IMG/VR virus record: IMGVR_UViG_3300035181_000471 | Span: 1 to 64,000 of that record | Length of the DNA stretch: 64,000 nucleotides | Direction: 5' to 3' (one strand) | Shown: positions 21,352 to 60,282 of the stretch, piece after piece | How positions within the stretch are numbered: the stretch's first letter is position 1 | Layout of the letters: the number at the start of each line of letters is the position of its first letter | The notes under the pieces: generated by a model | Database searches by the model: none | What the model was told of the DNA's origin: nothing | The model's input: only the letters and a program-made list of their open reading frames with translations | Position numbers and translations under genes: made by a program

Positions 21352-24300
21352 CTACTCATCCTCTTTTTCTGACTGATCGTCAGCGTCATAGCAAGAATCA
21401 CTACAGAATACTTCCATATCTCCACTTCTGACTAGCACTTCAGAAGGATTTAGAATGGGTTTGTTACAATAATGGCAAGTTGGGTATTCATCCCTAGCCC
21501 ATTCCAAGGTGGGTTCAGATAGATCCTGCAAGGACCAAGTGTCTACGAGATCTTCGAATAGAGTTAGAGGATCGACATGGTTGGTGCGAGTAACATAATC
21601 CCAGCTAATCTGCTTTGGATCAGTGAAAATAATTCCTCTGGTTAGGACTTTTTCTAGTTTCGGGTCCACATTGGCTGTTTCCATCGCGTTAGTAAATTCT
21701 TTGTAGTTTTCTGGGGTCAGGTAAATGAGGCTGTCATATTGACGAGGTTCCAGCTTGAAAAGACGGAGGCTATGAGTTAGAAATTCAGAAGATGCGTAAC
21801 TATCATAGGCCCAAAGGCTATCTAGCCATGTTGGGCAGAGCTTAAAGGCATCAACTAGAGTGAACGAAGGCTTAGCTCTCTTTACATCTTCGATGAGGGT
21901 AGCTCCGAAAGAGGTCTTCCATACAGCTCTAGACATATCGTCAATTAGGTCTTTCACCTTATGGTAGATGAACCCGCCTTTAATAAGGCGATTAACCTCA
22001 GGGTCATGTTCTCCTACAAACTGCATGTATTCCCAGTAAGTATCGTTAGCAACCCAGTAGGCTTGAACATCTTCACCGTATTCCCCGACATAAATTCTAT
22101 CTCCGAGATCTCCGCTCTTGGTATTTTGGCACTCAATATAGTCAAGATCAGGGCAATAGATTTGAGCTAGTTTATCAGAAGTATCGTCTGCGGGTGCAGT
22201 AGGGTCAGCATCTTGGGTGATTACATAAAGAGGGCCGGATTCTAAGTAATTCCTGGAGGTTCTTTCACCTTGAGTACACCAATTGGTGCCTTGTGACATG
22301 ATAACAGAAGCCTCGGGAGTAGTGATTCTGTAGAGAATGAGATCCCCTCTGCGTCCGACTACTTCGCATCCTTCTCTAAAGTATTTATCCCTCTGTCTGT
22401 CGATCTCTTTTCTCTGCTCGTTCTTAGATAGATCAGATCTTGTAGCGGAGGCTACTGCGTTGACTAGAGACTCGTAGTGATACTGATTGATGTCCCCGGA
22501 ATTGAGTTCTCTAAATGGAGTGCCTGGACGCTTGAGCATCGAGAATCTCTCAAGGAGGGCCGTAACCTCCCCAGCATTAGGAGCGTTGGGGTTCACGATG
22601 GAGCGAAGGGCCAATCTCTTGTTTTTATACTCTCTGCATAGCCAATCAACATACTCTCCATTAGGAGATGAGTCGATGCTATCCATTGCACCAACAACGG
22701 ATTCAGGAATGCCATACTTCTTCACTAGGGCATCATGCTTAGCCTTAGAGATAGCGGCCATTTTCTTACGAGAGGTCTTTGCAGAAGTTACCTTGAATGT
22801 GAAATCGGGATTGAGGTACCCGCCACGAACTAGTGAAGCTTTGATGTCACGGATACCCCAGCTAGACTCAAATTCTCCCTGAACATAGTCAAAGGCCCCA
22901 TCACGGAAATCCGACTCACCATCCTGATTGATAGCTTCGACTAGTGGAGCCACAAGATCTCTGGCCTTTTCAAACAAGTCCAGTGGGACACCGGGGTATA
23001 GTGACTCTCTTCTTGCATCTCCAGCACGAATAGCGCCGTTGATTGAGCTAAGATGCCATCTGATGTCTACGGTATCGAGGTCGATAGGAGCTTCGGTGTG
23101 GCTTTCATTATAAATGTCCACAGCCCTTTTTGTCACTTCAAAATACTTCTTCAGCGGTGACCCAGGTGAAGTCTTCAACTTCTCCCACTCTTTTTGTGCT
23201 TTTTCAGCTTTATCCTTGAATTCCTTGCTTTCTTTAGCTTCTTCTTGTTCAATTACATCGGAGAACGGAGCGAAGATCTCATCAATAGACTCCTTAATGA
23301 ATTCATCTCTAACCTCATCCCAACAGCTATCGCAATAGGATTCTCCAGCAGCTTGTAAAAAGTGCATATCATCGGAATCATAGCTCTCGCCACAACGAGG
23401 GCAATACTCTCTCTGAGCATCATTATAGCAATCGTCACACAGCATCTCGCCATTGTACTCGTTTAGGTCACGAGCCTCAAATTCACCCCCACAGTTATCG
23501 CAAGTAGCCTCATCCCTAGGGATTTCATCTCTGTTCTGAGAGATGGTGTGATCACTAATGTAGTCATTGATTATCTCGTCATGATGCGATAAGAATTCAA
23601 AGAACTTCCAGTATTCTGGCTTGTTGACCCAGTATCCACCACCTACATTACGACCTACATCTCGGCCATCTACATCCTGAGCTTCAATGCGACTTGGCTC
23701 ATCAGGAACGAAAATCTGAAGGAACTTGTCATCGTTATAGCTATTTTTGGCTTCACTCCCAGGCAGAGTAAAGATGTAAAGCGGGGCCATAGCTAGGTAG
23801 CCTGGACCATAGGCGGTTCCTCGGGTACACCAGTGAGTGTTCTTGCCTAGAATTTCAGAGGCTTGCATGGTGGTAACCCTGAAACAAAGATACCCACCCT
23901 CTACTTCACCTAAATATTCGCTGCCTTCTGTCAGATATTTTTGCTTGTTCTTTTCTATGTCTTCTTTGCGCTTGCGCTCCTGTTCCTTCTTGGACATATC
24001 TTCATTCGTAGTGGCCTCCATAGCAGCCACAAGAGTTGAAACGGTGTAGGAGTTGATATCACCTGAATTGGTCTGTCTAAAGGGGGTTCCTGGCCTCTTT
24101 ACGATACTGAATCTCTGAAGAACGGAAGTGATGTAGTCCTCTCTCGCACCAGAGGATGCAATTTCACCCCTACTTTGGGCCTTGCAGAGCCAGTCGGTAT
24201 ACTCCCCATTGGGTGTTGGATCAATATTAGACAAGGTTTCAACCAGAACGGGGTCTAGCTTGTATTTTTTAGCCAGGGCGTCTTTCTTAGCCTGGGATGC

Positions 24301-26040
24301 GGCTGCGTCTTTGATCAGAAGTCCGTTGTTCCAGGAGGATTCCTTGAGATGAAAGGTTCCATCCTCATTTAGATAGTCATACAACACCAAGATAGATCTG
24401 ATGTCTCTGTTTTTAGAATCAAAATCTCTTTTCACATCATCAATGGCTTCATCAACTAGATGCTCAAAGTTTTCCTCAATTCGTGTATACAGGGGATTCA
24501 GGGTATCATAGACTTTGACAAATTCTTCTTCGGAGATTCCAGGGTAGATTCTAGCTCTGTTCTCATTTGATGTCCAGGACGCAGAACGAGCGGTGGCTAA
24601 TTGCCAACTAATTCGTGCCATAATTTCAGGTGAGATTTTATCATAGATAGCTCTACGACCATTTAGATCTTTAACTATATCTCTGATTTTCTGGAAGTAG
24701 CTAGCTAAGGGGGAGTCTGGGCTATTGTATAGATTATCCCACTCTTCTTCGGCCTCCTCGCTATCTGCGTTCACTTGTGGTTCAAAGGGGGATAGGAGAC
24801 TGACCACAGTCTCCTTAATATAATCGTAATTGGCGTCTTTGAAGCACTCTTCTGAGCAAAAAGTCTTATGAGTTCTACTGTCTGGGACTCCATCTTCCAG
24901 TCTAAAGGTACTATCACAATAGTCACATACTTTTCTCCCATCCCAGTAGTCTTCCTCTGTTTTACAGATGGTGTTGTCTTCGATGTAATTTTTGATGACT
25001 GGATCAAACTTAGCGATGAATTCAAAAAGTTCCCAGAATTCACTTCTGGACACTATATACCCATCGTCTAGGTGTTCACCCAAGTCATCGCCATTGATGT
25101 CCTGGCATTCAATTCTGTCAGGGTGATGGCTTGGTGCAAAGATCTGGCAGAACTTATCACTAGCATAGTCTTCGTTGTCTTCACCAGGAGTTGTGACTAC
25201 ATAAAGAGGACCGTACTTTAGATAGCTAGCGGCGTAGCCCTCCCCCTTTGTACACCAGTGGGTGTCCTTGGATAGCACCTGAGATGCTTCCACGGTGGTA
25301 ACCTTGTAAACTCGGAATGGTCCGGTATCACCTAGAAGCTGACTCCCTTCAAGTGCATATTTATCCTGGTTTTGGTTCAAGTCCCTTTCTTTTTCTTTCT
25401 TGGAAAGATCGGCTCTGGAGGCAAGATCCATCTGGCGAAGGAACTCAGCAATGCTGTAGCGGTTAATGTCGGTCTGGTTCCCTAGTCTCCACTGAGGACT
25501 GTTCTTTAGCTTTTCAAATAACTCTAGCTTGCCCCTCAAGTCAGCCTTGAGAGTATCTGGTGTCTCGTTGTGACTGATGTAGTATTTGTACGCCTTACAA
25601 ATCCATTCCGTATAAGCACCATTAGCTGTTGGATCAATGTCAGCGATGAAATCAAGCTCGTCTTTAGATAGCCTGTATTTTGTCATCAGGGCGTTCTTCT
25701 TGGCGTCTGAAGCGGCGGCTAGAATAATGTGAGAAGCGGTCTTCTCTACGAGCTTCCCAGCATTGGAGCCGACTCGGGTCATCTCAAAGTCGTATTCGGC
25801 TAGATTGGCTCCGATTTCAGCCACATCTCCAAGGGTCCTGTTGTAGAAAGGTAGAGTCTTAAGCTCTCTAATTGCGACACCTACAATAACTGAACTCCTG
25901 AAGATTCTAGGAATAGAGCCGTTATTATACAAGTGCTGAACCCAGTAATAAAGGAATTGGGGCAGCACACTGGGATCGGTAACTTTGAACTTAATCGTGT
26001 TTCCGATAGCCGTAGCTAGTTTTGATTCAAATTCTAACAT
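21352..26040 (-). CDS. large triple-repeat protein with Zn ribbons
   Basis: Three copies of IDP/S..NG.Y..W.C...DIN.Y...TT..AS......T.WCT.G...YL..[GA]PLY...QI...IE.Q, separated by CxxC clusters. Confidence 0.75.
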   Translation of the reverse strand: MLEFESKLATAIGNTIKFKVTDPSVLPQFLYYWVQHLYNNGSIPRIFRSSVIVGVAIRELKTLPFYNRTLGDVAEIGANLAEYDFEMTRVGSNAGKLVEKTASHIILAAASDAKKNALMTKYRLSKDELDFIADIDPTANGAYTEWICKAYKYYISHNETPDTLKADLRGKLELFEKLKNSPQWRLGNQTDINRYSIAEFLRQMDLASRADLSKKEKERDLNQNQDKYALEGSQLLGDTGPFRVYKVTTVEASQVLSKDTHWCTKGEGYAASYLKYGPLYVVTTPGEDNEDYASDKFCQIFAPSHHPDRIECQDINGDDLGEHLDDGYIVSRSEFWELFEFIAKFDPVIKNYIEDNTICKTEEDYWDGRKVCDYCDSTFRLEDGVPDSRTHKTFCSEECFKDANYDYIKETVVSLLSPFEPQVNADSEEAEEEWDNLYNSPDSPLASYFQKIRDIVKDLNGRRAIYDKISPEIMARISWQLATARSASWTSNENRARIYPGISEEEFVKVYDTLNPLYTRIEENFEHLVDEAIDDVKRDFDSKNRDIRSILVLYDYLNEDGTFHLKESSWNNGLLIKDAAASQAKKDALAKKYKLDPVLVETLSNIDPTPNGEYTDWLCKAQSRGEIASSGAREDYITSVLQRFSIVKRPGTPFRQTNSGDINSYTVSTLVAAMEATTNEDMSKKEQERKRKEDIEKNKQKYLTEGSEYLGEVEGGYLCFRVTTMQASEILGKNTHWCTRGTAYGPGYLAMAPLYIFTLPGSEAKNSYNDDKFLQIFVPDEPSRIEAQDVDGRDVGRNVGGGYWVNKPEYWKFFEFLSHHDEIINDYISDHTISQNRDEIPRDEATCDNCGGEFEARDLNEYNGEMLCDDCYNDAQREYCPRCGESYDSDDMHFLQAAGESYCDSCWDEVRDEFIKESIDEIFAPFSDVIEQEEAKESKEFKDKAEKAQKEWEKLKTSPGSPLKKYFEVTKRAVDIYNESHTEAPIDLDTVDIRWHLSSINGAIRAGDARRESLYPGVPLDLFEKARDLVAPLVEAINQDGESDFRDGAFDYVQGEFESSWGIRDIKASLVRGGYLNPDFTFKVTSAKTSRKKMAAISKAKHDALVKKYGIPESVVGAMDSIDSSPNGEYVDWLCREYKNKRLALRSIVNPNAPNAGEVTALLERFSMLKRPGTPFRELNSGDINQYHYESLVNAVASATRSDLSKNEQRKEIDRQRDKYFREGCEVVGRRGDLILYRITTPEASVIMSQGTNWCTQGERTSRNYLESGPLYVITQDADPTAPADDTSDKLAQIYCPDLDYIECQNTKSGDLGDRIYVGEYGEDVQAYWVANDTYWEYMQFVGEHDPEVNRLIKGGFIYHKVKDLIDDMSRAVWKTSFGATLIEDVKRAKPSFTLVDAFKLCPTWLDSLWAYDSYASSEFLTHSLRLFKLEPRQYDSLIYLTPENYKEFTNAMETANVDPKLEKVLTRGIIFTDPKQISWDYVTRTNHVDPLTLFEDLVDTWSLQDLSEPTLEWARDEYPTCHYCNKPILNPSEVLVRSGDMEVFCSDSCYDADDQSEKEDE

Positions 26041-26054
26041 TCATCCACCTAAAA

Positions 26055-26080
26055 ATTGGCCCCTCGTAAAAGGGGCCAAT
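26055..26080 (-). terminator. intrinsic terminator
   Basis: ATTGGCCCCT/AGGGGCCAAT 10-bp stem plus T-tract. Confidence 0.7.
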
Positions 26081-26101
26081 AGTCAATTTCCTGCAAGGGC
26101 G

Positions 26102-26863
26102 TTACTTGGCTACACCTTTGCCTACGAAGAACCCGAGGACCACAGCGGCTACAGCTTTAACATTTCCATTGAACTTCTCGCGCTTAACCTGTTTATCTGT
26201 CTCTTTTACGATGACTTCAAGGTTAGCCTCACGCTCTACATGCCTGGTGATTACAGTGCCTTGTTGAAGGATAATCTCGTTACCCTTGTCGCGCTCCAGC
26301 ACCAAACCCTTAACTTGCGTTGTTAGGCTAGTAGATAGGCCAAGCTGTGTGCTATAAGCGGTCTCAAGACCTGGGACTCTCTGACTTTCCTTATACCATG
26401 TCCAAATAGTAGGGGCATTCCCAGCAGGGGAAGCGATGGTTCCCAGCTTGTAGGGGTCATCCCCCAACTTAGGAACAGTGAGGGTGAATTTAACCCCGGA
26501 TTCTCCGATCTGATTGATGGCGTCGCCGATGTCTTTGGGAGGGTCCCCCACTGGCTTAGGGGGGGGATTTCTTAGGGCCTTCTCTTTCCAAACTTCAACT
26601 TCAGAGGCAAGGGTGTCGTTCTTAACGGCTAGCTCTGCCTTCTGCTTCTTAACCTCGTCTAACTGATCAGTGAGGATTCTTAGTTCGGTTTTGCGCTTGA
26701 TATCTTCTTCTTGTCTGGCATTGTTCTGATTGGTCTGGTACCTGTCATAAGCCTTCCAGCCCTGCCAACACACACCTAGAACAACTACAGCGATGATGAT
26801 ATTTAGGTATTTTTGGATGACATCCCCCACGCCACCTAAACTCTTAGTGAAGTTATCTAACAT
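26102..26863 (-). CDS. membrane coiled-coil protein (spanin-like)
   Basis: N-terminal TM, coiled coil, Pro-rich linker, C-terminal hydrophobic segment. Confidence 0.45.
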   Translation of the reverse strand: MLDNFTKSLGGVGDVIQKYLNIIIAVVVLGVCWQGWKAYDRYQTNQNNARQEEDIKRKTELRILTDQLDEVKKQKAELAVKNDTLASEVEVWKEKALRNPPPKPVGDPPKDIGDAINQIGESGVKFTLTVPKLGDDPYKLGTIASPAGNAPTIWTWYKESQRVPGLETAYSTQLGLSTSLTTQVKGLVLERDKGNEIILQQGTVITRHVEREANLEVIVKETDKQVKREKFNGNVKAVAAVVLGFFVGKGVAK

Positions 26864-38404: not shown

Positions 38405-38406
38405 AA

Positions 38407-38910
38407 TCAACCTTCAAAAGAGGGTCTAAAAGTTTCATTTTGTGGGGGCTTAGCCATAATTGCGGCAGTTGCGGCTTCTAGCTTGGCTTTATCTAGTTTT
38501 GGCTTCTTTGGCTTGCCATGCTTCTCTTGTGCTTCTTCCTTCTTTTTATGCTCGGCTTCCAGGCTTTTCTGGTAGTCTTTTTCAGCTTTATCAAGCTCTT
38601 TCTCGTAATTATTAAGGTTTTTACCAGCTACCTCAATCTCCCTGCTCAATGCCTGGAAGATTAGAGCGGAAGATTTAGCCAACATCATCAAGGATTCCTT
38701 TTCTTGAGCCACGCTAGCTAGCACTTGTCTTGAGATACCCTTGCTGTCCTGCTCAAACTGATCATAAAATTCGATCAGATTATTAAGCTGGCTCAGCATA
38801 GCCGACATAGAAGCCCTTGATCTAGATAGCATAGTTAGCTGAGTGGTCGATTTATTGAGTAATCGACCAAGAGACACATGCTTCTTATTCCTTGAAATTA
38901 TAAGGGTCAT
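38407..38910 (-). CDS. hypothetical coiled-coil protein
   Basis: Coupled ORF. Confidence 0.6.
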   Translation of the reverse strand: MTLIISRNKKHVSLGRLLNKSTTQLTMLSRSRASMSAMLSQLNNLIEFYDQFEQDSKGISRQVLASVAQEKESLMMLAKSSALIFQALSREIEVAGKNLNNYEKELDKAEKDYQKSLEAEHKKKEEAQEKHGKPKKPKLDKAKLEAATAAIMAKPPQNETFRPSFEG

Positions 38911-53654: not shown

Positions 53655-53729
53655 TGGCGGGGGATGAGAGATTCGAACTCCCAGGCGTGGATTTGGAGTC
53701 CACTCGTTTAGCCATTAACGGAATCCCCC
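53655..53729 (-). tRNA. tRNA-Trp(CCA)
   Basis: Cloverleaf, loop CT CCA AA, G73, CCA. Confidence 0.9.
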
Positions 53730-53754
53730 GTAACTAAATAAGAATAACATGAAT

Positions 53755-53829
53755 TGGAGCCTAAGGAGGGAGTTGAACCCTCTTTCCATCCTTACCAAAG
53801 ATGTGTAATAGCCGTTATACTACAGAGGC
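53755..53829 (-). tRNA. tRNA-Thr(GGT), two acceptor mismatches
   Basis: Loop TT GGT AA; acceptor GCCTCTG/CTTAGGC. Confidence 0.8.
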
Positions 53830-53835
53830 ATTGAG

Positions 53836-53856
53836 GTGAGGGGACTGCCCCCTCAC
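53836..53856 (-). terminator. GC-rich hairpin after the Pth-like gene
   Basis: GTGAGGGG/CCCCTCAC. Confidence 0.5.
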
Positions 53857-53862
53857 TAGGGA

Positions 53863-54474
53863 TTACAGAAGTTCGAAGTTTCTGTGGTACCAGAAACCGT
53901 CTTGGAAAGTGTTCATAATGGCAACAGCGGTAATCTTGTTGTCCATGTCTGGCTCTCTCCAAATTGTTTTGTATTCGCCAGGACCAGTCTTCCCAGAGAG
54001 ATCTTTGCTACTGGCGTAAGGACTAGTGTCCTTTTTAGGAGTCATTAGGATGAGAGTCCCATTGGTCCAAGGAGCGAGTGGATGCTCCTTTTGAAACTGT
54101 GCGGCGGCGTGACTAGCCTGGACAACCTTTTGTGAGGTCGAGAGACTTGGATCGACAACGATGTAAAGCTTTTTGGCTCCAGGGTTGTTGAGGTAGGTCT
54201 TGAAGTGTTGAATCCCGGCCTGCATTGGGGCTAGAAGGGCCTTGTATTCTCTTTGCTTGCCTTCGGTATAGGGTAGGGTCTCACAAGGGCCTTTAGCCTT
54301 GTGTCCCGCTAATCCGCGAATCAGAGCGCGATGCTCACTGAGAGCGATATGGAGCATTCTGATTTCGGTTCTAAGGCCACCTTGCTTCTTGTGCTTTTCG
54401 ATAAGCAGTCTGAGCAAGAGTCTAGCGTTGAAGTAAGCTTCTTTTTGTTCCTGAGTGTAAGTGACATAAGCCAT
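53863..54474 (-). CDS. Pth2-like peptidyl-tRNA hydrolase with N-terminal extension
   Basis: KLYIVV...LS..Q...Q.SHA and WREPD....TAVA; start trimmed to MAYV. Confidence 0.72.
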   Translation of the reverse strand: MAYVTYTQEQKEAYFNARLLLRLLIEKHKKQGGLRTEIRMLHIALSEHRALIRGLAGHKAKGPCETLPYTEGKQREYKALLAPMQAGIQHFKTYLNNPGAKKLYIVVDPSLSTSQKVVQASHAAAQFQKEHPLAPWTNGTLILMTPKKDTSPYASSKDLSGKTGPGEYKTIWREPDMDNKITAVAIMNTFQDGFWYHRNFELL

Positions 54475-54551
54475 GTTTTTCTCCTTTAGAATGGTTGGCT
54501 GGTTTGTTAGCGGCAACTTCTAAGGATGGCTTATGGTGAGCGTGATGGCAC

Positions 54552-54575
54552 CTAGAGGTGATTTCTCCCGGTCAT
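54552..54575 (-). promoter_or_regulatory. uORF MTGRNHL-amber upstream of the Pth-like gene
   Basis: AAGGAG-N6-ATG, TAG stop; next in-frame stop TAA at 54531. Confidence 0.5.
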
Positions 54576-54602
54576 ATTATACTCCTTTATGGTTAAGTAA
54601 AA

Positions 54603-54680
54603 TGGTGCCCTCGGAGGAATTCGAATCCCCGATCAAGGTTTTAGAGACCCCAGCTTTAGGCCAGACTAAGCTACGAGGGC
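54603..54680 (-). tRNA. amber suppressor tRNA (anticodon CTA)
   Basis: Perfect acceptor GCCCTCG/CGAGGGC, A73, loop CT CTA AA, TTCGAAT, CCA. Confidence 0.88.
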
Positions 54681-54687
54681 TAGTAAC

Positions 54688-55050
54688 CTAGACTTCTGGG
54701 ATGATTAGAGGCTCAATCTGGCTTAGATCATTGGGAGTCAACTTGACATCACCAAAGGCGGCAAGAGGGAGTGGTTCGAAGGGGACTTCAATCTCAGTGG
54801 TTAGAAGCTCGGTCATTGCGGCGGTAAAACCAGGACCATCTTCAGGTGAAAAGACGAACTGGGTCTTGTCATCATTCAACACACCGTTGAACTTCTCAAT
54901 GAGCTTCTGTCTTTCCGTGTCGAAAGTAGCCATCTCAGCGATCAGCACCTTGGCTAAACGAGAGATCTGGTATGATGTCTTAGTAGGGAACACCTTGTCG
55001 TAAATGGTTGAACCTAGAATGGACTGAATTTCTTGAATCTTTAGCTTCAT
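54688..55050 (-). CDS. hypothetical phage protein (DUF1617-like)
   Basis: P.K.SY.ISRL.K....E...F..ER.KLI.K pattern. Confidence 0.6.
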   Translation of the reverse strand: MKLKIQEIQSILGSTIYDKVFPTKTSYQISRLAKVLIAEMATFDTERQKLIEKFNGVLNDDKTQFVFSPEDGPGFTAAMTELLTTEIEVPFEPLPLAAFGDVKLTPNDLSQIEPLIIPEV

Positions 55051-55075
55051 GTTAACTCCTAAAATATGATACTGC

Positions 55076-55573
55076 TTAAACTGGTCTTTCTGGTCTCATA
55101 CCTTTAAATTTCTCTGGGTATGTTTTCAAAAGGAATTTTCTGGTTTCGGCTTCTTGCTTAAGCGCGCTTTTTTCAAGAGTTCGATCTTTCCAAGGAAGGT
55201 CTTTCTCTTCGTCTACAATGGAGATAAATCTATCAACTCCAAAAACTATATATGCATCGAAGGCGTGGTCTAGTTCGTGAGCGATAATTGGTTCAAGTTT
55301 TTCACGCTTCAAATTGATCTCGTTCCAGTCGAAAGTAATCTCGGCTCTATCATGGAAAATGGCGGTCTGGGCTAGTGTGTTACCCTTTAAATCCCCGATC
55401 TTCCAAGTGATAGGCACGGGAATGGCCTTTAATCTGGCGTTATCAGCGGGTGATAGCTGAAGTAGAGTTTCTAAAGCGGTCTGAATTTGTTGCTGTGGAG
55501 TAGGCTGAGGCTTACAAGTCACTAAAAGAAGGACCGTAAGGGTCGCCAGACATAGCTTGCTGAGTGTGTGCAT
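55076..55573 (-). CDS. putative lipoprotein with HExxH motif
   Basis: LLVTC lipobox; IAHELDH...LE..A. Confidence 0.6.
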   Translation of the reverse strand: MHTLSKLCLATLTVLLLVTCKPQPTPQQQIQTALETLLQLSPADNARLKAIPVPITWKIGDLKGNTLAQTAIFHDRAEITFDWNEINLKREKLEPIIAHELDHAFDAYIVFGVDRFISIVDEEKDLPWKDRTLEKSALKQEAETRKFLLKTYPEKFKGMRPERPV

Positions 55574-55613
55574 ATGAGCCTCAACATAGAAATAGAAATT
55601 AGTTATTTTTTTT

Positions 55614-55699
55614 TGGCGGAAGCGATAGGAATTGAACCTACAACCCTGTTACGGGCGACAGTTTTCGAGACTGCTTGTCATGCCAGTGACCACGCTTCC
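55614..55699 (-). tRNA. tRNA-Ser(CGA)
   Basis: Loop CT CGA AA, long V arm, G73. Confidence 0.9.
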
Positions 55700-55705
55700 G
55701 TGATA

Positions 55706-55888
55706 TTGTGACTCCACCGGACACGGTATTTCGCGCCAACCTAGTCCGAATCGAACGGATTATAGCCCCGAAAAGCTCTTTGGTTCTCCCGTAAGGAGTC
55801 AAGGCGTGAATGGACTTAGGAGGTCTGAATCGCATCTTATAGCCGTCTGCTAAACTGCATCTATTCAGTTCGTTCGTTCAGGTCACAA
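55706..55888 (-). ncRNA. unknown structured RNA, about 183 nt
   Basis: Terminal TTGTGAC/GTCACAA helix, internal hairpins including TCCG-TTCGATT-CGGA; fills the tRNA spacer. Confidence 0.55.
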
Positions 55889-55890
55889 AT

Positions 55891-55964
55891 TGGAGCGGGA
55901 TAGGGGGCTTGAACCCCTGACACTAGCTCGGCAAGCTAAAGTTTTACCACTAAACTAATCCCGC
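55891..55964 (-). tRNA. tRNA-Gly(GCC)
   Basis: Loop TT GCC GA, U73. Confidence 0.9.
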
Positions 55965-55966
55965 AA

Positions 55967-56054
55967 TGGCGGAAGATAAGGGAATCGAACCCTTTAGGCT
56001 GTTATACCTTCACTTTAGCAAAGTGACGCACCTCTCCAACTGTGCCGATCTTCC
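55967..56054 (-). tRNA. tRNA-Ser(GCT)
   Basis: Loop TT GCT AA, long V arm. Confidence 0.9.
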
Positions 56055-56060
56055 ATGATT

Positions 56061-56138
56061 TGGTAATCCCAGCGGGATTTGAACCCGCATTCTCACCTTG
56101 AGAGGGTGGCGTCCTGGCCTGAGTTAGACGATGGGACT
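56061..56138 (-). tRNA. tRNA-Glu(CTC)
   Basis: Loop CT CTC AA. Confidence 0.88.
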
Positions 56139-56142
56139 GTCG

Positions 56143-56964
56143 TTACTGGTGTATCTTGTGTCGCCTATCATTAAAGGAGAACTCAATATACTCTACTTTC
56201 TGGTTACCAGTGAATTTAGTCTTGAATTGTTCAATATATTTATTAGCTTTGCCCTTTTTGACATATGCTATTGTAGTATGAGGCGCATAGTCAGGGAATG
56301 AATTGGCGTTATCTGGGTAGACTTCATTGCAATAATCGAATAAATCCTGGAGTTCTGGACTCTTTTCAACCTTTATAATGAGAACATCGTATGGTGCATC
56401 AGCGGGAGTGAACTGGCTTAAACCTAACCACTCAACCGACTTGACTTCTAGGCTTGGGTTGAACTTGTCTGGTGTTTGGTCCTTAATTCCGTAGAGACAA
56501 GTAATGTGGGGGTAGTCCTCTTTTCCCTTGATCTCTCCATCGGTGTAGACATCCTCTGGATCAACACTTTCAACGAACTCTAGAATTTTCTTAGTGACCT
56601 CTGGAGCGTAAGTCAACTGCACTGTGCTGTAGTCGTAAGCGGCTTGCTTTGTAAGGAGTCTGGCGAAAAAGGTTAGGAACCCCTTTTTACCACCTTGGCC
56701 GTAAGCTCTATCGTGATCGCCTTGAACACTAAGAATGAACAAAACTCCTTCATCAACCTTACACACGGCTCTTATTCCTTGGGATACTCGGATGGAAAGG
56801 AAGCCTGGGTTAGACTTAATTGGTTCTAAGTGGGTTCCTGCCCCATCTCTTAGCTGTTGTTCAGTGGCCTCAGTGACTTTAATCCTCAGAGCATCAAGAA
56901 GACGCTTTATATTCGGATTCTTTTTTGCCTGTTTAGTAGCGTCTTTTCCAAGTTCCATTTGCAT
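56143..56964 (-). CDS. RelE/HigB-like domain fused to a 2H phosphoesterase (Acb1/T4 57B-like)
   Basis: N: HLEP....GFLSIRV..GIRAV.......H..Y; C: PHITCLYG and FPDY.PHTTIAY. Confidence 0.8.
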   Translation of the reverse strand: MQMELGKDATKQAKKNPNIKRLLDALRIKVTEATEQQLRDGAGTHLEPIKSNPGFLSIRVSQGIRAVCKVDEGVLFILSVQGDHDRAYGQGGKKGFLTFFARLLTKQAAYDYSTVQLTYAPEVTKKILEFVESVDPEDVYTDGEIKGKEDYPHITCLYGIKDQTPDKFNPSLEVKSVEWLGLSQFTPADAPYDVLIIKVEKSPELQDLFDYCNEVYPDNANSFPDYAPHTTIAYVKKGKANKYIEQFKTKFTGNQKVEYIEFSFNDRRHKIHQ

Positions 56965-56975
56965 GTAAAGCCCTC

Positions 56976-57131
56976 TTATTCAGCGATGTAGCCAGCCTTG
57001 CGAAGAGCCTGCTTACCGCCAGCCTTGCGAAGAGCCTTGTAATCTTCGATTTCCTTGTTGTAACGAGCAACCTGCTCAGCGGTCAGAACGATCTCAGGCT
57101 CAGCGGTCTTCTTGTTCTTTTCGTTGGTCAT
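56976..57131 (-). CDS. small basic protein, 51 aa, with an ALRKAG duplication
   Basis: Promoter copy plus GGAGG RBS; 20-bp direct repeat. Confidence 0.65.
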   Translation of the reverse strand: MTNEKNKKTAEPEIVLTAEQVARYNKEIEDYKALRKAGGKQALRKAGYIAE

Positions 57132-57147
57132 GTGTCCCTCCACTATT

Positions 57148-57178
57148 ATTATACCAGAGTTAAGTTGATTCTCTTACT
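57148..57178 (-). promoter_or_regulatory. putative phage promoter (AGTAAGAGAA-N13-GGTATAAT)
   Basis: Copy of the recurring motif. Confidence 0.6.
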
Positions 57179-57190
57179 AGAATTGAGAAG

Positions 57191-57358
57191 TTATTTGTTC
57201 CTGTGGGTCTTTTTCTTTCTGACCCCATGCCTAGGTTTGCGGGAAGCATTTTCATTGCGATGCCACTTGCAGTAGGGGCAACTGGCTTCTAGTTCTTTAT
57301 GCCTTTTGGCCCAGACCGTAGAGTTTTCGGTAGTGTCTAGTTCATTTTTGGCTTTCAT
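57191..57358 (-). CDS. small basic Zn-finger-like protein, 55 aa
   Basis: AGGAG RBS; CPYC..H; K/R-rich tail. Confidence 0.6.
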   Translation of the reverse strand: MKAKNELDTTENSTVWAKRHKELEASCPYCKWHRNENASRKPRHGVRKKKTHRNK

Positions 57359-57374
57359 AAAGCTCCTGGAATAA

Positions 57375-57465
57375 TGGGTCCGTCCTAGGGGAGTCGAACC
57401 CCTTGTGCGTAAAATTACGCTGTGGTTTAAAAGACCACGGCCTGAACCGTGCGGCAAAGGACGGA
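57375..57465 (-). tRNA. atypical tRNA, anticodon TTT (Lys), long variable arm, 8-bp acceptor
   Basis: GTGGT-CT TTT AA-ACCAC; V arm GCGTAA/TTACGC; TCCGTCCT/AGGACGGA. Confidence 0.8.
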
Positions 57466-57486
57466 TAATGGTGCTATTTGTGTTTT

Positions 57487-57560
57487 TGGTAGCCACTTGC
57501 AGAATCGAACTGCAAACTCTTCCATGTCGAAGAAGCGGTATCCCACTTACCTAAGCGGCT
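57487..57560 (-). tRNA. tRNA-Val(GAC), C33
   Basis: Loop TC GAC AT. Confidence 0.8.
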
Positions 57561-57645
57561 ATTTTAATTCACTGGGTAGTTGCATTCACCCATCCGGTAG
57601 GGACACCTGTTTTCAAAATCCCGGCTTGTCAAGCTCCTTTAATAG

Positions 57646-57730
57646 TGGTGCGGATAGAGGGAGTCGAACCCCCATGCCGTTAGGCGCTGGCTTCTAAGAC
57701 CAGTTTGTCTACCAATTCCAACATACCCGC
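57646..57730 (-). tRNA. tRNA-Leu(TAG)
   Basis: Loop CT TAG AA, long V arm. Confidence 0.92.
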
Positions 57731-57736
57731 ATCGAA

Positions 57737-57811
57737 TGGAGCCTCTAAGGGGAATCGAACCCCTATCGTCTGATTACGAAACAGACATAATTGCCATTAT
57801 ACTACAGAGGC
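57737..57811 (-). tRNA. tRNA-Thr(CGT)
   Basis: Loop TT CGT AA; T31-T39 mismatch. Confidence 0.88.
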
Positions 57812-57841
57812 AAGAAGTAATTTAGTTGTCCAGTTAAATGT

Positions 57842-57917
57842 TGGTGTGACATGGGGGTTATGATCCCCCTCCGCGACTTTCACAGAGTCGTGTGCATCCG
57901 ATTACACCTATGTCACC
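57842..57917 (-). tRNA. tRNA-His(GTG) with non-canonical T loop
   Basis: Loop CT GTG AA; encoded G-1 opposite A73; T loop ATCATAA. Confidence 0.8.
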
Positions 57918-57959
57918 GTCTGGGGAATGAAGGACCACCTGTCCTAAATTCCGATTCTA

Positions 57960-58038
57960 TGGCGGTTCGTACGGGATTTGAACCCGTGATCTTTTGCGTG
58001 ACAGGCAAATGGGGACGGCCAGACTCCCCTAACGAACC
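57960..58038 (-). tRNA. tRNA-Asp(GTC)
   Basis: Loop CT GTC AC, G73. Confidence 0.9.
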
Positions 58039-58040
58039 AT

Positions 58041-58117
58041 TGGTACCCCCGGTAGGACTCAAACCTACATAATTCACCGTGTAAAGATGATGCCTAATCT
58101 CTCGGCGTCACAGGGGC
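58041..58117 (-). tRNA. tRNA-Val(TAC)
   Basis: Loop TT TAC AC. Confidence 0.85.
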
Positions 58118-58125
58118 ATTGATGT

Positions 58126-58201
58126 TGGAGCCGAATATCAGAATTGAACTGATCTCTCTGCGTTACAAGGGCAGAATAATTATCCACTATACTAATCCGG
58201 C
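58126..58201 (-). tRNA. tRNA-Thr(TGT)
   Basis: Loop CT TGT AA; C31-C39 mismatch. Confidence 0.85.
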
Positions 58202-58208
58202 ATGATAT

Positions 58209-58279
58209 TGGAAGGGCTGTAGGGAATCGAACCCTATCTGTTCGCTTCAAAGGCGAATCTGTCATCCTGTCTCAACCCT
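58209..58279 (-). tRNA. tRNA-Gln(TTG) with degenerate D arm
   Basis: TTCGC-CT TTG AA-GCGAA, good T arm, no clear D stem. Confidence 0.7.
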
Positions 58280-58280
58280 A

Positions 58281-58378
58281 TGGTTTCACACCTGAGCCGT
58301 CAAGCCCCAATCTCCCTAGCCCATCAAGCCGTATGGAAGACAATCGCTAGACTGATGAGATCCGTGCGATAGTGTGAA
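58281..58378 (-). ncRNA. CCA-ended tRNA-like RNA without an anticodon arm
   Basis: TTCACAC/GTGTGAA plus ACCA; nested helices ATCTC/GAGAT, CTAGC/GCTAG, CCAT/ATGG. Confidence 0.6.
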
Positions 58379-58460
58379 TGGCTCTCCATGTAGGAATCGA
58401 ACCTACTTAGCTTGCGCGACTGGTTAACAGCCAGTTACCGACCCGGACAGTATATGGAGA
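58379..58460 (-). tRNA. atypical tRNA-Asn(GTT) with extended variable arm
   Basis: ACTGG-CT GTT AA-CCAGT; V region with GC-GCAA-GC. Confidence 0.78.
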
Positions 58461-58525
58461 ATGAATTTCTTAGATAGTGGCCGTTGATCCACTTACGCTC
58501 TGTCGCTCAGTGCAGAGTATCTGTT

Positions 58526-58601
58526 TGGTGCCTCAGATGGGAGTCGAACCCACAACCAATAGAGTAAGAGTCTACTGCTCGACCAATTGAGCTTCTGAAG
58601 C
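58526..58601 (-). tRNA. tRNA-Lys(CTT)
   Basis: Loop CT CTT AC, conventional fold. Confidence 0.88.
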
Positions 58602-58671
58602 ATAAATACAGCACCCGGCACACTGGCTCTTTTACGCATACGCGACCTGTAGCCTGACGGTGTTGTGATTT

Positions 58672-58733
58672 TGGTGGATACAGTGGGTATTGAACCCACC
58701 TAGGGAGCTACCCTACTCGCCTTGAGTGTACCC
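58672..58733 (-). ncRNA. 62-nt mini-tRNA with Ala identity
   Basis: GGGTACA/TGTATCC (G3.U70), A73, CCA, T arm TTCAATA, 5-nt loop TAGCT. Confidence 0.7.
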
Positions 58734-58738
58734 ATGAT

Positions 58739-58825
58739 CGGTGATCCCAAGGGGAGTCGAACCCCTACAGTCGAGGACGCCTGGGTAAGAGCCAGGGGTG
58801 GTAGCCAGTTGCCACTATTGGGACC
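58739..58825 (-). tRNA. atypical tRNA, anticodon CTT (Lys), long V arm, foldable as 8/4, no encoded CCA
   Basis: CCTGG-CT CTT AC-CCAGG; V arm GTC/GAC; GGTCCCAA/TTGGGATC; ends ACCG. Confidence 0.75.
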
Positions 58826-58902
58826 GTAATTTGCGGCTCTAGGAACCCATCTTCCTAAATTTGATCCTGTCATGCAGGAACCGCCTATTTTTAAAGTTGC
58901 CA

Positions 58903-59259
58903 CTATTTCCAGAGTTTAAAGTTGGTAATTTCATCTTCCGCATTGGAAAGAGCATCCTCAAGGGAGGAGACTTCGGTTTCAAGATGAGAGATACGGCCTT
59001 CAAGAACTGAGAGAACTATTGCAAGACGCTCGGAAACCGTTCCATTCCAAATACCTGGAGTGTCGGGGAACATCCCACAGAGGGGGAGAATCAAGTCACT
59101 GCACTTGGTAAAGTCAGCGTAGACGGCATCTACTTCGTCCAGGGCGACCATTGCTTCCTTGGTGAAGAGTAGCATCTCGTTGGACTCAGGGTCAAAACGA
59201 GTGAGATCCTTGATGTTCTCATCAAGAGCTTCTCGGATCAGTGCAAGCTTTTCGGACAT
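58903..59259 (-). CDS. hypothetical protein
   Basis: Promoter copy plus GGAGG; start trimmed to MSEK. Confidence 0.65.
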   Translation of the reverse strand: MSEKLALIREALDENIKDLTRFDPESNEMLLFTKEAMVALDEVDAVYADFTKCSDLILPLCGMFPDTPGIWNGTVSERLAIVLSVLEGRISHLETEVSSLEDALSNAEDEITNFKLWK

Positions 59260-59275
59260 GAGTGCCTCCATAGTT

Positions 59276-59306
59276 ATTATACTCGGAAGCTTCGTGTTTT
59301 CTTACT
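59276..59306 (-). promoter_or_regulatory. putative phage promoter (AGTAAGAAAA-N13-AGTATAAT)
   Basis: Same boxes and spacing as the copy at 1555. Confidence 0.65.
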
Positions 59307-59313
59307 GTTTATT

Positions 59314-59387
59314 TGGTGGAGCCGGGGAGAATCGAACTCCCGATATCTGGATGCAAACCAGAGGTTATCCCTCTTAACTACGACCCC
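59314..59387 (-). tRNA. tRNA-Ala(TGC)
   Basis: Loop TT TGC AT, G3.U70. Confidence 0.9.
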
Positions 59388-59392
59388 AAAGC

Positions 59393-59473
59393 TAGACACA
59401 TTGTTGGCATTCTTTGAAGAGGAACACGCCAAGACTCTTGTTCAGGGGTTATGGGTTGCTGTTGATGTGTCTA
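59393..59473 (-). ncRNA. ACAGCAAC hairpin element, copy A
   Basis: TAGACACAT/ATGTGTCTA closing stem then CAACAGCAAC. Confidence 0.55.
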
Positions 59474-59499
59474 AGGGCTTAAGCACTACACTTAGGCTT

Positions 59500-59573
59500 T
59501 GGAGCGGGTTACGAGATTCGAACTCGTTTCGACAGCTTGGAAGGCTGAGGCACAACCCATATACCAAACCCGC
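59500..59573 (-). tRNA. tRNA-Gly(TCC)
   Basis: Loop CT TCC AA. Confidence 0.9.
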
Positions 59574-59583
59574 TTAGGCTACT

Positions 59584-60282
59584 TCACTTCTTAATACTCA
59601 ACTTATCAAGCTCTCGATGAAGAGCTTTCAACTTTTTTGCGACTGCTGGAGCTTCCTCTTCCATAGTGTGTTCATGCCACTCTTGGCTAGGACTACTGTG
59701 TGAGTTAGTATTAAGATCCCACCACTTCTCAAGCTCGTCGATTTTAGCTTTAATTTTTTCGATCTTGTCTTTTCGAACCTCAGGGAATTCTTGGAAGGTG
59801 ATGGCGTAATCGTCCTTGTCACCCACATAGGTTCTTCCAAAGTTTACCCAGTTCTCAACATTTCTGAGTTCTTTGTAGTGTTGACCCCAGATGTAGTCTA
59901 CACCCAGCTTCTCAGGGATGGATCTTAGTTGTCTTCCTGCTCCGTAAGCACGGTATTCAGGTAGAACAAAGATTGCAACACCTTTGATACCAGTCTTGTT
60001 TTCCAAGCCGTGGACGCCTAGCTCAACTAAATCAGAGGCGGGTTTCTTCTCTTTCTTCAAGAAGTAGCCACCAATAATCTGTCCATCAGCAAGCGCAACA
60101 TAACAATTACTGAAGTTATTGCCCATTTCTTCTTTGATTTCAGTCTTTACATCCTCTTCTGATAGCCCTAAGGACTCTTTAAAGGACTTAAAACAGACAT
60201 TTAAAGCTTCAGCTACTTCGCTACGCTTCATCTTTCTGATCTGGATATCAAAGGCTGTCTTGGTGAGTAAGGTGGAAATCAT
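59584..60282 (-). CDS. GNAT-family acetyltransferase
   Basis: YVA..DGQIIG, IFVLPEYRAYGAGRQL motif A; start trimmed to MISTLL. Confidence 0.82.
   Translation of the reverse strand: MISTLLTKTAFDIQIRKMKRSEVAEALNVCFKSFKESLGLSEEDVKTEIKEEMGNNFSNCYVALADGQIIGGYFLKKEKKPASDLVELGVHGLENKTGIKGVAIFVLPEYRAYGAGRQLRSIPEKLGVDYIWGQHYKELRNVENWVNFGRTYVGDKDDYAITFQEFPEVRKDKIEKIKAKIDELEKWWDLNTNSHSSPSQEWHEHTMEEEAPAVAKKLKALHRELDKLSIKK

What the first reader, a model, noticed from the sequence alone, without database searches (positions are those of the whole stretch)
21352..60282. Shared L-L-x-K-x-A motif at domain boundaries: candidate capsid-targeting or prohead-protease site
Seen: MISTLLTKTA directly precedes the GNAT domain; ARLLTKQAA sits exactly between the RelE-like and 2H domains; KLVEKTAS, GLLIKDAA and RKKMAA precede the three modules of the 1562-aa protein; the portal has KIQKKAD and KLVTRKFAD before its low-complexity insert. 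Known: T4 and phiKZ prohead proteases cut short motifs to mature internal head proteins that are then injected. Inference: these unrelated enzymes are packaged, cleaved and delivered at infection.
Basis: inference. Interest (0 to 1): 0.62.

Follow-up and report, generated by a model that had tools for sequence, protein, structure and literature searches.

The report
Phage head-protease K-x-A leader motif
A short lysine-x-alanine signal, often preceded by two leucines, sits at the starts and domain joints of head proteins and of several unrelated enzymes in this soil jumbo phage and its relatives; this fits a cutting and packaging tag read by the head-maturation protease, but no experiment has shown it.

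Summary
All seven strings exist where stated. The window is the first 64 kb of a 221-kb jumbo-phage contig related to Tunturiibacter phage Tunturi_5 and, distantly, Bacillus phage G.

By count alone the strict L-L-x-K-x-A motif is not significant (6 seen, 2.6 expected genome-wide; thousands of same-shape patterns do as well). Three of the seven strings lie at or near the homologous starts of a tripled module, so they are not independent.

Two things are clearly non-random:
- **K-x-A core.** It is concentrated in the head-maturation protease, the putative scaffold and the capsid protein N-terminus, all outside the window.
- **Placement of L-L-x-K-x-A.** Across three genomes, 6 of 16 copies start at residues 2-12 of mutually unrelated proteins (4% expected). 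This ties for the top among all same-shape patterns.

Best reading: K-x-A is the prohead protease site, and the LL form is a removable N-terminal or junction leader. Packaging of the GNAT, RelE-2H and 1562-aa proteins is plausible but unproven. Verdict: partly supported; a new variant of a known kind.

The parts
59584..60282 (-). GNAT-like acetyltransferase, 232 aa, true start at 60282
   Evidence: PHROG 1249 acetyltransferase E 1.6e-6; Pfam Acetyltransf_7 19.6 bits, below cut-off. Upstream part of the long ORF overlaps tRNA-Glu. Five homologues found.
60253..60282 (-). N-terminal leader MISTLLTKTA of the GNAT protein (fits L-L-x-K-x-A and ends in K-T-A)
   Evidence: K8 is invariant in 5 homologues, but K-T-A is kept only in the 80%-identical one. 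Same form as leaders on unrelated proteins in relatives G001 and G005.
56143..56964 (-). Two-domain protein of 273 aa: RelE/YoeB-fold domain (residues 1-88) + linker + 2H phosphoesterase (residues 109-273)
   Evidence: AF2 model pLDDT 82. VIA Z 9.0 to RelE and 14.3 to 2H enzymes. Foldseek E 4e-6 to cGAMP PDE, Acb1 and CPDase. The two H-x-T motifs are invariant. In G001 the two domains are separate genes.
56638..56664 (-). ARLLTKQAA in the inter-domain linker (residues 101-109)
   Evidence: pLDDT below 50 over residues 84-110. K-x-[A/G] is kept in the full-length homologues and in the closer stand-alone 2H homologues (P0014, P0015), where it lies at residues about 10-12; the most distant members lack it. 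G001's 2H protein starts with a leader ending in K-T-A. The G004 giant protein has K-N-A before its 2H domain.
21352..26040 (-). 1562-aa protein: N-domain (about 95 aa) + three tandem homologous modules with Zn-finger spacers; zf-FCS at the C-end
   Evidence: Self-alignment. Pfam zf-FCS E 1.2e-6. Each module hits residues about 1110-1423 of the G005 2984-aa polyvalent protein (E 2e-12, 1e-10, 2e-6). No PDB fold match except LIM-like fingers.
25732..25755 (-). KLVEKTAS, 8 residues before the start of module 1
   Evidence: One of only four K-x-A-[A/S/T] sites in the protein.
24301..24324 (-). GLLIKDAA at the start of module 2
   Evidence: It lies in the disordered first 18 residues of the module model, and the first helix follows at once.
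22753..22770 (-). RKKMAA at the start of module 3 (same alignment column as the module 2 site)
36113..38410 (-). Portal protein, 765 aa
   Evidence: PHROG 16240 portal E 4e-26. 56% identical to the Tunturi_5 portal.
38240..38260 (-). Portal N-terminal site KIQKKAD, about 20 aa before the conserved portal core
   Evidence: At the same place four relatives read K-S-A, K-T-A, K-T-G-A and K-T-A, while the upstream 55-95 aa are not conserved.
37565..37591 (-). Portal site KLVTRKFAD directly before the Pro/Ala/Gly/Asp-rich insert
   Evidence: K-x-A directly precedes the insert in this phage and in 3 of 4 aligned relatives.
37340..37564 (-). Low-complexity insert of the portal (residues about 283-357)
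   Evidence: Read. Length and sequence vary among relatives.
20551..20952 (-). 133-aa protein next to the 1562-aa gene that carries the W-C-T tripeptide used here to flag the module family; not aligned to the module
   Evidence: motif listing only. The aligned or BLAST-supported family members lie in the late (+) block at 150903, 209027, 211206 and 216654 of the contig.
53655..63992 (-). Array of 36 tRNA genes in which the GNAT and RelE-2H genes are embedded
   Evidence: ARAGORN.

Best explanation
K-x-A, most often K-T-A and usually followed by A, S, G or T, is the recognition site of this phage clade's head-maturation protease. The protease gene lies at contig positions 165097-165960, outside the window.

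The site appears in three settings:
1. Protease, scaffold, capsid protein and portal, where cutting would remove propeptides and the scaffold's and protease's C-terminal tails.
2. Short N-terminal leaders of the form M-x(3-9)-L-L-x-K-x-A on otherwise unrelated proteins.
3. Joints between domains of multi-domain proteins, including the giant polyvalent effector proteins of relatives.

On this reading the window's GNAT protein carries a 10-residue removable leader. The RelE-2H protein would be split at its linker. The 1562-aa protein would be cut into its modules. The portal would lose a variable N-terminal piece, and the enzymes would travel in the capsid and enter the host with the DNA.

Shown here: the motif's concentration, positional conservation and N-terminal or junction placement. 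Inferred: that the motif is cleaved, by which enzyme, where the scissile bond lies, and that the window's enzymes are packaged.
For: **Head proteins of this genome.**
- K-T-A occurs 9 times in protease + scaffold + capsid protein against 0.42 expected, and K-x-A 22 times against 8.4 (p < 2e-4). That is 9 of the 34 K-T-A in the genome, within 1.5% of the proteome.
- Eight of 11 ORFs in the head block have K-x-A in residues 3-25, against 36 of 201 elsewhere (Fisher 2e-4).
- K-x-A is enriched at N-termini genome-wide (49 seen, 27 expected, p 4e-5). Control patterns R-x-A, E-x-A and K-x-S are not.

**Relatives.**
- In 30 non-redundant proteases K-x-A occurs 178 times against 57 expected. Control patterns run at about 1x or below. 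There are five conserved K-x-A columns with a variable middle residue.
- Scaffolds that are only 31-61% identical each carry K-T-A in different low-complexity contexts, often including one 20-40 aa from the C-end.
- The capsid protein has K-T-A at position 19 in 77 of 80 relatives.

**Independent lineages.**
- Phage G gp19-21: K-T-A 4 seen, 0.23 expected (p 2e-4).
- Tunturi_5: protease gp331 has the same three sites. Scaffold gp332 has K-x-A 16 against 5.6. The annotated ejection protein gp328 has 19 against 8.8.

**Polyvalent proteins.**
- Tunturi_5 gp321 (SprT-like, 2H, ART-PolyVal, GNAT, ART-PolyVal) has K-[A/T/S]-A-[A/S/T] 4 times against 0.41 expected. Each lies at a domain joint, and a K-T-A follows the 2H domain.
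- The G004 3348-aa protein has 7 against 0.75.

**Leaders.**
- Six of 16 L-L-x-K-x-A copies start at residues 2-12, on mutually non-homologous proteins. These include a GNAT, a 140-aa domain also found inside the G005 polyvalent protein, an AdoMet-decarboxylase-like protein and the G005 polyvalent protein itself.
- G001's module protein has the arginine variant of the leader, SSLLTRQA.

**Junction rule for the module.** K-x-A-[A/S] precedes the module wherever another domain lies upstream (six cases). It is absent in two of the four family members that begin at the module, P0043 and the 931-aa paralogue; the other two carry an N-terminal leader instead.

**Accessibility and precedent.**
- Both folded cases place the motif in a segment with pLDDT below 50.
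- SPN3US precedent: short and long N-terminal propeptides, a cleaved portal and a C-terminal protease propeptide (PMC10052503).
Against: - No experimental data exist for any member of this clade. The Tunturi paper has no virion proteomics.
- K-x-A carries little information (382 copies in this proteome), so no single site can be called from sequence.
- Phage G's capsid protein lacks the site.
- Three further polyvalent proteins (G001, G005) show only weak or no enrichment: 5 against 2.0, 4 against 3.2, 5 against 1.9.
- The strict LL form is not enriched in G001 (3 against 2.8).
- The GNAT leader is not kept in the more distant homologues.
- The segment before the 2H domain is conserved as a whole and could be a structural helix.
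- The GNAT and RelE-2H genes lie in the tRNA array on the strand of the replication genes, not in the late block.
- ORF starts in the relatives were taken as the first start codon and are not verified.
Confidence: 0.5

Rival explanations
1. The window instances are coincidence plus ancestry. K-x-A is common, three instances come from one tripled module, the 2H instance is a conserved N-terminal helix of that 2H subfamily, and the GNAT instance is an ordinary N-terminus. On this view none of the window's enzymes is cleaved or packaged, even if head proteins are processed at K-x-A.
For: - The strict motif fails a look-elsewhere correction by count.
- The module repeats are homologous.
- The whole segment before the 2H domain, of the form F..LL.K.A.YDYST, is conserved, also in stand-alone 2H proteins, and is predicted helical at low confidence.
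- The GNAT leader is not conserved beyond one close relative.
- Both genes lie in the tRNA array.
Against:
- Domain types matching all three window proteins occur inside polyvalent proteins of relatives. For 2H and the module this is shown by direct homology; the window's GNAT gave no BLAST match to them.
- K-x-A before the 2H domain persists where the flanking sequence does not.
Confidence: 0.25
2. The junction and leader sites are cut by the zincin (SprT-like) peptidase that is part of the polyvalent proteins, and is a solo gene here at contig 146969-147664. The prohead protease would not be the enzyme, and cutting could happen before packaging or after injection.
For: - Tunturi_5 gp321 begins with a SprT-like HExxH domain.
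- This genome has a 35%-identical solo copy.
- Iyer et al. 2017 propose autoproteolysis of polyvalent proteins by such peptidase domains (PMC5512222).
Against: - The same motif is most concentrated and best conserved in the prohead protease itself, the scaffold, the capsid protein and the portal. These are classic prohead-protease substrates.
- No zincin-type domain was reported by Pfam in the G004 and G005 giant proteins.
Confidence: 0.12
3. The motif is a docking or targeting element that is not cleaved. It would bind scaffold, portal or the inner capsid wall, or serve another N-terminal function such as a membrane-binding or turnover signal.
For: - In T4 the capsid targeting sequence works as an address as well as a cleavage substrate (PMC10052503 discussion).
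- The hydrophobic pair plus lysine could form an amphipathic turn.
Against: - Its placement mirrors known cleavage maps: about 20-40 aa from the C-ends of protease and scaffold, multiple copies in scaffold low-complexity regions, and at domain joints.
- The middle residue varies while K and A are fixed, as in protease subsites.
Confidence: 0.1

Closest known systems
T4 capsid targeting sequence and gp21 prohead protease (internal proteins IPI-III, Alt)
   Same: Short N-terminal leaders of about 10-20 residues on unrelated proteins end in the protease's three-residue site. The same site occurs in scaffold and capsid protein. The cargo is injected with the DNA. (Established knowledge; discussed in PMC10052503.)
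   Different: T4 cuts after Glu in L/I-x-E, whereas here the fixed residues are Lys and Ala. There is no Peptidase_S77 match in this genome. The capsid protein here is a small HK97-fold protein without a long delta domain.
phiKZ / 201phi2-1 / SPN3US prohead proteases (gp175 / gp245) and their ejection proteins
   Same: A jumbo phage with many head proteins carrying N-terminal propeptides, a processed portal, a C-terminal propeptide on the protease, several motif copies per propeptide, and paralogous ejection-protein families.
   Different: The motif there is A/S/G-x-E. This phage belongs to a phage G / Tunturi_5-like lineage. No proteomics exist for this lineage.
Polyvalent proteins of phages and conjugative elements (Iyer, Burroughs, Anand, de Souza, Aravind 2017)
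   Same: Relatives encode ART-PolyVal giants that combine 2H, GNAT, NUDIX, a SprT-like peptidase and the module of the 1562-aa protein. The paper also notes solo versions of such domains and RelE-related (BECR-fold) RNases.
   Different: The window's proteins are solo or two-domain forms, and the contig (77% complete) has no ART-PolyVal gene. The paper proposes autoproteolysis by zincin domains. A shared K-x-A joint motif that matches head-protease sites is not described in the parts I read.
Herpesvirus assemblin maturation and release sites
   Same: From my own knowledge, not tested here: an Ala at P1 followed by Ser (V/L-x-A|S; K-A|S in one cytomegalovirus release site). One site lies near the C-end of the scaffold and frees it from the capsid protein.
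   Different: The scissile bond here is unknown.

Membership tests
Prohead-protease propeptide / capsid-targeting system (T4, phiKZ kind) | Phage-encoded head maturation protease next to scaffold and capsid genes | tested here: met
   PHROG 18299 head maturation protease E 3.4e-18. 28% identical to phage G gp19. Gene order is protease, scaffold-like protein, small protein, capsid protein.
Prohead-protease propeptide / capsid-targeting system (T4, phiKZ kind) | One short motif recurring in protease, scaffold and capsid protein beyond composition, and conserved in position | tested here: met
Prohead-protease propeptide / capsid-targeting system (T4, phiKZ kind) | The same motif ends short N-terminal leaders of unrelated non-structural proteins | tested here: met
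   Six of 16 L-L-x-K-x-A copies start at residues 2-12 over three genomes, on non-homologous proteins.
Prohead-protease propeptide / capsid-targeting system (T4, phiKZ kind) | Cleavage at the motif and presence of the mature proteins in virions | not testable with these tools
   No proteomic data for this lineage.
T4 gp21 family (Peptidase_S77) with L/I-x-E specificity | S77 protease domain and Glu at P1 | tested here: not met
   No PF03420 match in the genome, and none for PF04586 either. The motif has Ala, not Glu.
Polyvalent proteins (Iyer et al. 2017) | Several unrelated effector domains in one polypeptide, typically with ART-PolyVal, MuF or a peptidase | tested here: inconclusive
   RelE-2H has two effector-type domains. 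The 1562-aa protein is three copies of a module found in the G005 polyvalent protein. No ART-PolyVal is found in this contig, though it is present in both 100%-complete relatives.
2H phosphoesterase superfamily (Acb1 / LigT / CPDase) | Two H-x-T/S motifs on the 2H fold | tested here: met
   H153-x-T155 and H229-x-T231 are invariant. Foldseek E 4e-6, VIA Z 14.3.
Acb1 anti-CBASS family specifically | Pfam PF23474 above its gathering score | tested here: not met
   22.9 bits against a cut-off of 27. The structure matches Acb1 no better than other 2H enzymes.
RelE/ParE toxin superfamily | RelE fold; catalytic residues | tested here: inconclusive
   Fold met: Z 9.0-7.0 to RelE, YoeB, HigB and ParE over residues 1-88. 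Pfam ParE_toxin reaches only E 0.056. Catalytic residues were not examined.
GNAT acetyltransferases | Pfam GNAT model above cut-off | tested here: inconclusive
   Acetyltransf_7 scores 19.6 bits, below 27. PHROG 1249 E 1.6e-6. The 80%-identical homologue carries PF00583.

The most novel reading that the evidence does not exclude
Phage G / Tunturi_5-like jumbo phages use a portable address-and-cut tag, M-x(3-9)-L-L-x-K-x-A, read by a prohead protease with Lys-x-Ala specificity. The tag loads arbitrary solo enzymes into the capsid (GNAT, 2H phosphoesterase, AdoMet-decarboxylase-like and others). The same site turns their giant polyvalent proteins into true polyproteins that are diced inside the head before injection.
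Probability: 0.35. Interest if true: 0.75.

Novelty: new variant of a known kind. Interest (0 to 1): 0.62.

Why it matters
If the K-x-A site and the LL leader are real, three things follow.
- **A rule for predicting cargo.** It would give a sequence rule for which proteins a large, mostly uncultured clade of soil jumbo phages packs into the capsid and injects. These include candidate counter-defence enzymes: a 2H phosphoesterase of the Acb1 / cGAMP-phosphodiesterase fold, a GNAT, ADP-ribosyltransferases and NUDIX.
- **How polyvalent proteins are processed.** It would link the 'polyvalent protein' idea to a concrete processing enzyme. That makes an open question, how these giants are processed, testable in one mass-spectrometry experiment on a cultured phage (Tunturi_5).
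- **A possible packaging tag.** A short transferable packaging tag with a new protease specificity could also be useful for loading foreign proteins into phage capsids, as the T4 tag has been.

Tried and rejected
- **No DNA-level relative.** A megablast of 12 kb against the phage collection found nothing.
- **Standard head families absent.** Pfam S77, S78 and HK97 capsid searches of the genome were blank. The head genes were found only through phage G proteins.
- **False lead from an annotation.** The Tunturi_5 label 'major head protein' on gp90 led to an AAA-ATPase-like gene here at contig 93429-94508. The real Tunturi_5 capsid gene is gp334.
- **No close relatives by pattern search.** The search for related loci with the GNAT and RelE-2H proteins found none.
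- **No GNAT homologue in G001 or G005**.
- **The module has no known fold or family.** Foldseek against the PDB gave only LIM-like zinc fingers. The atlas library was unavailable. Pfam on its pieces gave nothing.
- **The protease has no solved relative.** A profile search against PDB sequences gave nothing, and NCBIfam gave nothing for protease or scaffold.
- **Initial reading withdrawn.** I first judged the 'L-L' part to be pure chance, from counts alone. The positional test in relatives overturned that.
- **Alternative genetic code rejected.** An amber-suppressor-like tRNA is present, but TAG ends 39 of 212 ORFs.
- **Not used, because they would not bear on the question:** the large representative protein search, the complex predictor and the sequencing-run tools.
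Full report
**What the window is.** It is the first 64 kb of a single 221,217-bp viral contig, rated 77% complete and linear. Coding is mostly on the minus strand. The window holds replication and recombination genes, the large terminase, a 765-aa portal and an array of 36 tRNA genes. The nearest isolate is Tunturiibacter phage Tunturi_5, a 308.7-kb phage of Acidobacteriota with a portal 56% identical and shared gene order. Bacillus phage G is a distant relative.

**The observation.** All seven strings are present.
- The GNAT string is the real N-terminus, because the longer ORF runs into tRNA-Glu.
- In the 273-aa protein an AlphaFold model (pLDDT 82) shows a RelE/YoeB-fold domain at residues 1-88 (VIA Z 9.0, rmsd 3.5 over 85 residues) and a 2H phosphoesterase at residues 109-273 (Z 14.3). 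The string sits in the only low-confidence stretch, residues 84-110.
- The 1562-aa protein is an N-domain plus three homologous modules. Its three strings lie at or just before the module starts, so they are not independent.
- Only three of the seven strings fit L-L-x-K-x-A. The rest share K-x-A.

**Chance, by count.** Among patterns of the same shape, 2549 (genome), 604 (window) and 80 (region) are at least as enriched. Relaxed hydrophobic versions are not enriched. On counts alone the motif is not established.

These lie outside the window, found through phage G proteins:
- protease at 165097-165960 (PHROG head maturation protease, E 3e-18);
- an acidic 430-aa scaffold-like protein at 166041-167333;
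- a small protein;
- a 301-aa HK97-fold capsid protein at 168040-168945 (37% identical to phage G gp27; NCBIfam 120.7 bits).

These three proteins hold 9 of the genome's 34 K-T-A tripeptides, against 0.42 expected. K-x-A occurs 22 times against 8.4.

**The head genes in relatives.** I fetched 80 related head modules.
- The protease keeps K-x-A with a variable middle residue near residue 5, near residue 33 and 20-40 residues from the C-end. Over 30 non-redundant proteases the count is 178 against 57 expected, while control patterns run at about 1x or below.
- The scaffolds are only 31-61% identical and 389-819 aa long. They carry K-T-A in many different low-complexity contexts, often including one near the C-end.
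- The capsid protein has L-K-T-A at residue 19 in 77 of 80.
- Tunturi_5 shows the same sites in gp331, gp332 and gp334. Its annotated ejection protein gp328 also has an excess (19 against 8.8).
- Phage G gp19-21 have four K-T-A against 0.23 expected, although its capsid protein lacks the site.
- The portal's two strings are also conserved in place. K-[K/S/T]-A lies about 20 residues before the conserved core, behind a variable N-terminal piece. K-x-A directly precedes the low-complexity insert in this phage and in 3 of 4 aligned relatives.

This layout matches the experimentally mapped pattern in SPN3US: N-terminal propeptides, a processed portal and a C-terminal protease propeptide (PMC10052503).

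**Polyvalent proteins.** The 2H domain of the window's protein matches segments of giant ORFs in relatives.
- Tunturi_5 gp321 is 1362 aa and is encoded between the head-tail connector and tail genes. It reads SprT-like peptidase, 2H, ART-PolyVal, GNAT, ART-PolyVal.
- Its only four K-x-A-[A/S/T] sites, plus one K-T-A, fall at its five mapped domain joints (K-[A/T/S]-A-[A/S/T] 4 against 0.41 expected, p 0.001).
- A 3348-aa protein of a 463-kb relative (2H, NUDIX, ART-PolyVal) has 7 such sites against 0.75.
- Three more giants in G001 and G005 show only weak enrichment, so the pattern is not uniform.
- Both 100%-complete relatives have ART-PolyVal giants. The three contigs rated 71-77% complete, including this one, have none. 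This genome's copy may therefore lie on the missing part.
- These proteins are the 'polyvalent proteins' of Iyer et al. 2017. That paper predicts they are packaged and injected, lists 2H, GNAT and RelE-related RNase domains, and notes solo versions.

**Links from the window's proteins to those giants.**
- Each module of the 1562-aa protein matches residues about 1110-1423 of the G005 2984-aa giant (E 2e-12 to 2e-6). A K-H-A-A lies upstream of the module there.
- A solo 140-aa protein next to the head genes matches residues 804-930 of the same giant from its residue 9 onward, just after a leader that fits L-L-x-K-x-A.
- The module family has five or six members here. Those supported by alignment or BLAST lie in the late block.
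- K-x-A-[A/S] precedes the module wherever something lies upstream (six cases). It is missing in two of the four family members that begin at the module; the other two carry an N-terminal leader instead.
- In G001 the RelE-like and 2H parts are separate genes. That 2H protein starts with a 12-residue leader ending in K-T-A.
- Stand-alone 2H homologues from other contigs start with a leader of the SSLLNKIA kind.

I fetched two complete relatives and called ORFs.
- L-L-x-K-x-A is not enriched by count in G001 (3 against 2.8) and mildly in G005 (7 against 2.5).
- Its placement is striking. Over the three genomes, 6 of 16 copies start at residues 2-12 against 4% expected (p 2.4e-5). In the two relatives alone it is 4 of 10 (p 4e-4). 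Only one other of all same-shape patterns reaches six N-terminal hits.
- The carriers are mutually non-homologous. They are this phage's GNAT and 140-aa protein, an AdoMet-decarboxylase-like protein (Pfam E 2e-8), proteins of 499 and 175 aa, and the N-terminus of the G005 giant. G001's module protein has the arginine variant.
- In this genome, 8 of 11 head-block ORFs have K-x-A in residues 3-25 against 36 of 201 elsewhere (p 2e-4). In the tail block only one of about a dozen ORFs does.
- An 868-aa late protein keeps E-I-[I/V]-K-T-A-P-D behind N-terminal pieces of 17-39 residues in all three genomes.

**Interpretation.**
- Shown: a K-x-A core that is concentrated and positionally conserved in classic protease substrates, and an LL-bearing form that sits preferentially at N-termini and domain joints of unrelated proteins.
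- Inferred: it is the cleavage site of the head maturation protease and also serves as a leader for prohead incorporation, as the T4 capsid targeting sequence does.
- For the window's proteins I rate cleavage and packaging as plausible. The case is strongest for the 1562-aa protein and the portal, moderate for RelE-2H and weakest for the GNAT. I cannot exclude that these particular instances are coincidence or structural elements.
- The zincin peptidase of the polyvalent proteins is a rival enzyme for the junction sites.

**Comparison and novelty.** The logic is that of T4 (leader plus L/I-x-E) and phiKZ/SPN3US (A/S/G-x-E), with a different specificity, in a lineage without any proteomics. It also extends to polyvalent proteins. 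I found no description of this motif in the papers read. I could not search the whole literature for it. I file it as a new variant of a known kind.

Noticed in passing
window 54603-54680 (-): A tRNA with anticodon CTA (called tRNA-Pyl by ARAGORN), an amber-suppressor candidate inside the 36-tRNA array. TAG still ends 39 of 212 ORFs, so the genome does not look recoded.
   Followed up: partly
window 56143-56964 (-): Fusion of a RelE/YoeB-fold RNase-like domain to a 2H phosphoesterase. RelE-type cuts leave 2',3'-cyclic phosphate ends, which 2H enzymes can open. In relative G001 the two are separate genes 4.3 kb apart. Activity of the RelE part was not examined.
   Followed up: partly
window 21352-26040 (-) and contig 150903-152459, 209027-210640, 211206-214001, 216654-217775: A paralogous family built on a module of about 300-500 aa with conserved D-P-T-x-N-G-x-Y and T-x-W-C-T-x-G, followed by Cys-rich zinc fingers. 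It has no Pfam family and no PDB fold match. JGI labels one homologue 'ribosomal protein S27AE', which probably reflects only the zinc ribbon.
   Followed up: partly
window 37340-37564 (-): The portal carries an insert of about 75 residues rich in Pro, Ala, Gly and Asp. Its length and sequence differ in every relative.
   Followed up: partly
L002:36477-37706 (Tunturi_5 gp90) and L155:8070-9029 (gp334): The GenBank label 'major head protein' on Tunturi_5 gp90 looks wrong. Its only match here is an AAA-ATPase-like protein. gp334, also labelled 'major head protein', is the real HK97-fold capsid gene, 69% identical to this phage's. gp333, labelled 'tail fiber protein', sits where a decoration-like protein sits here.
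   Followed up: partly
contig 94661-96294 (-), L004:12661-14294: Two RNA ligase genes (PHROG 968 E 6e-97; PHROG 548). With the large tRNA set they suggest tRNA repair. They are not next to the 2H gene.
   Followed up: no
contig-wide, late (+) block: The tripeptides G-A-T, A-T-G, T-G-A and T-G-N are 3-4 times over-represented (for example G-N-x-G-x-T 67 seen, 1.6 expected). This points to long repeat-rich, fibre-like proteins.
   Followed up: no
contig 146969-147664 (-), L007:10969-11664: A solo SprT-like zincin, 35% identical to the N-terminal peptidase domain of the Tunturi_5 polyvalent protein gp321.
   Followed up: partly
contig 211206-214001 (+): The 931-aa module paralogue is depleted in K-x-A (3 seen, 10 expected). 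This could mean avoidance of the site in a mature packaged protein, or nothing at all.
   Followed up: no
L132:17419-17859 (G001): A 146-aa AdoMet-decarboxylase-like protein in relative G001 with a 12-residue leader of the L-L-x-K-T-A form. The enzyme domain starts near residue 34.
   Followed up: partly
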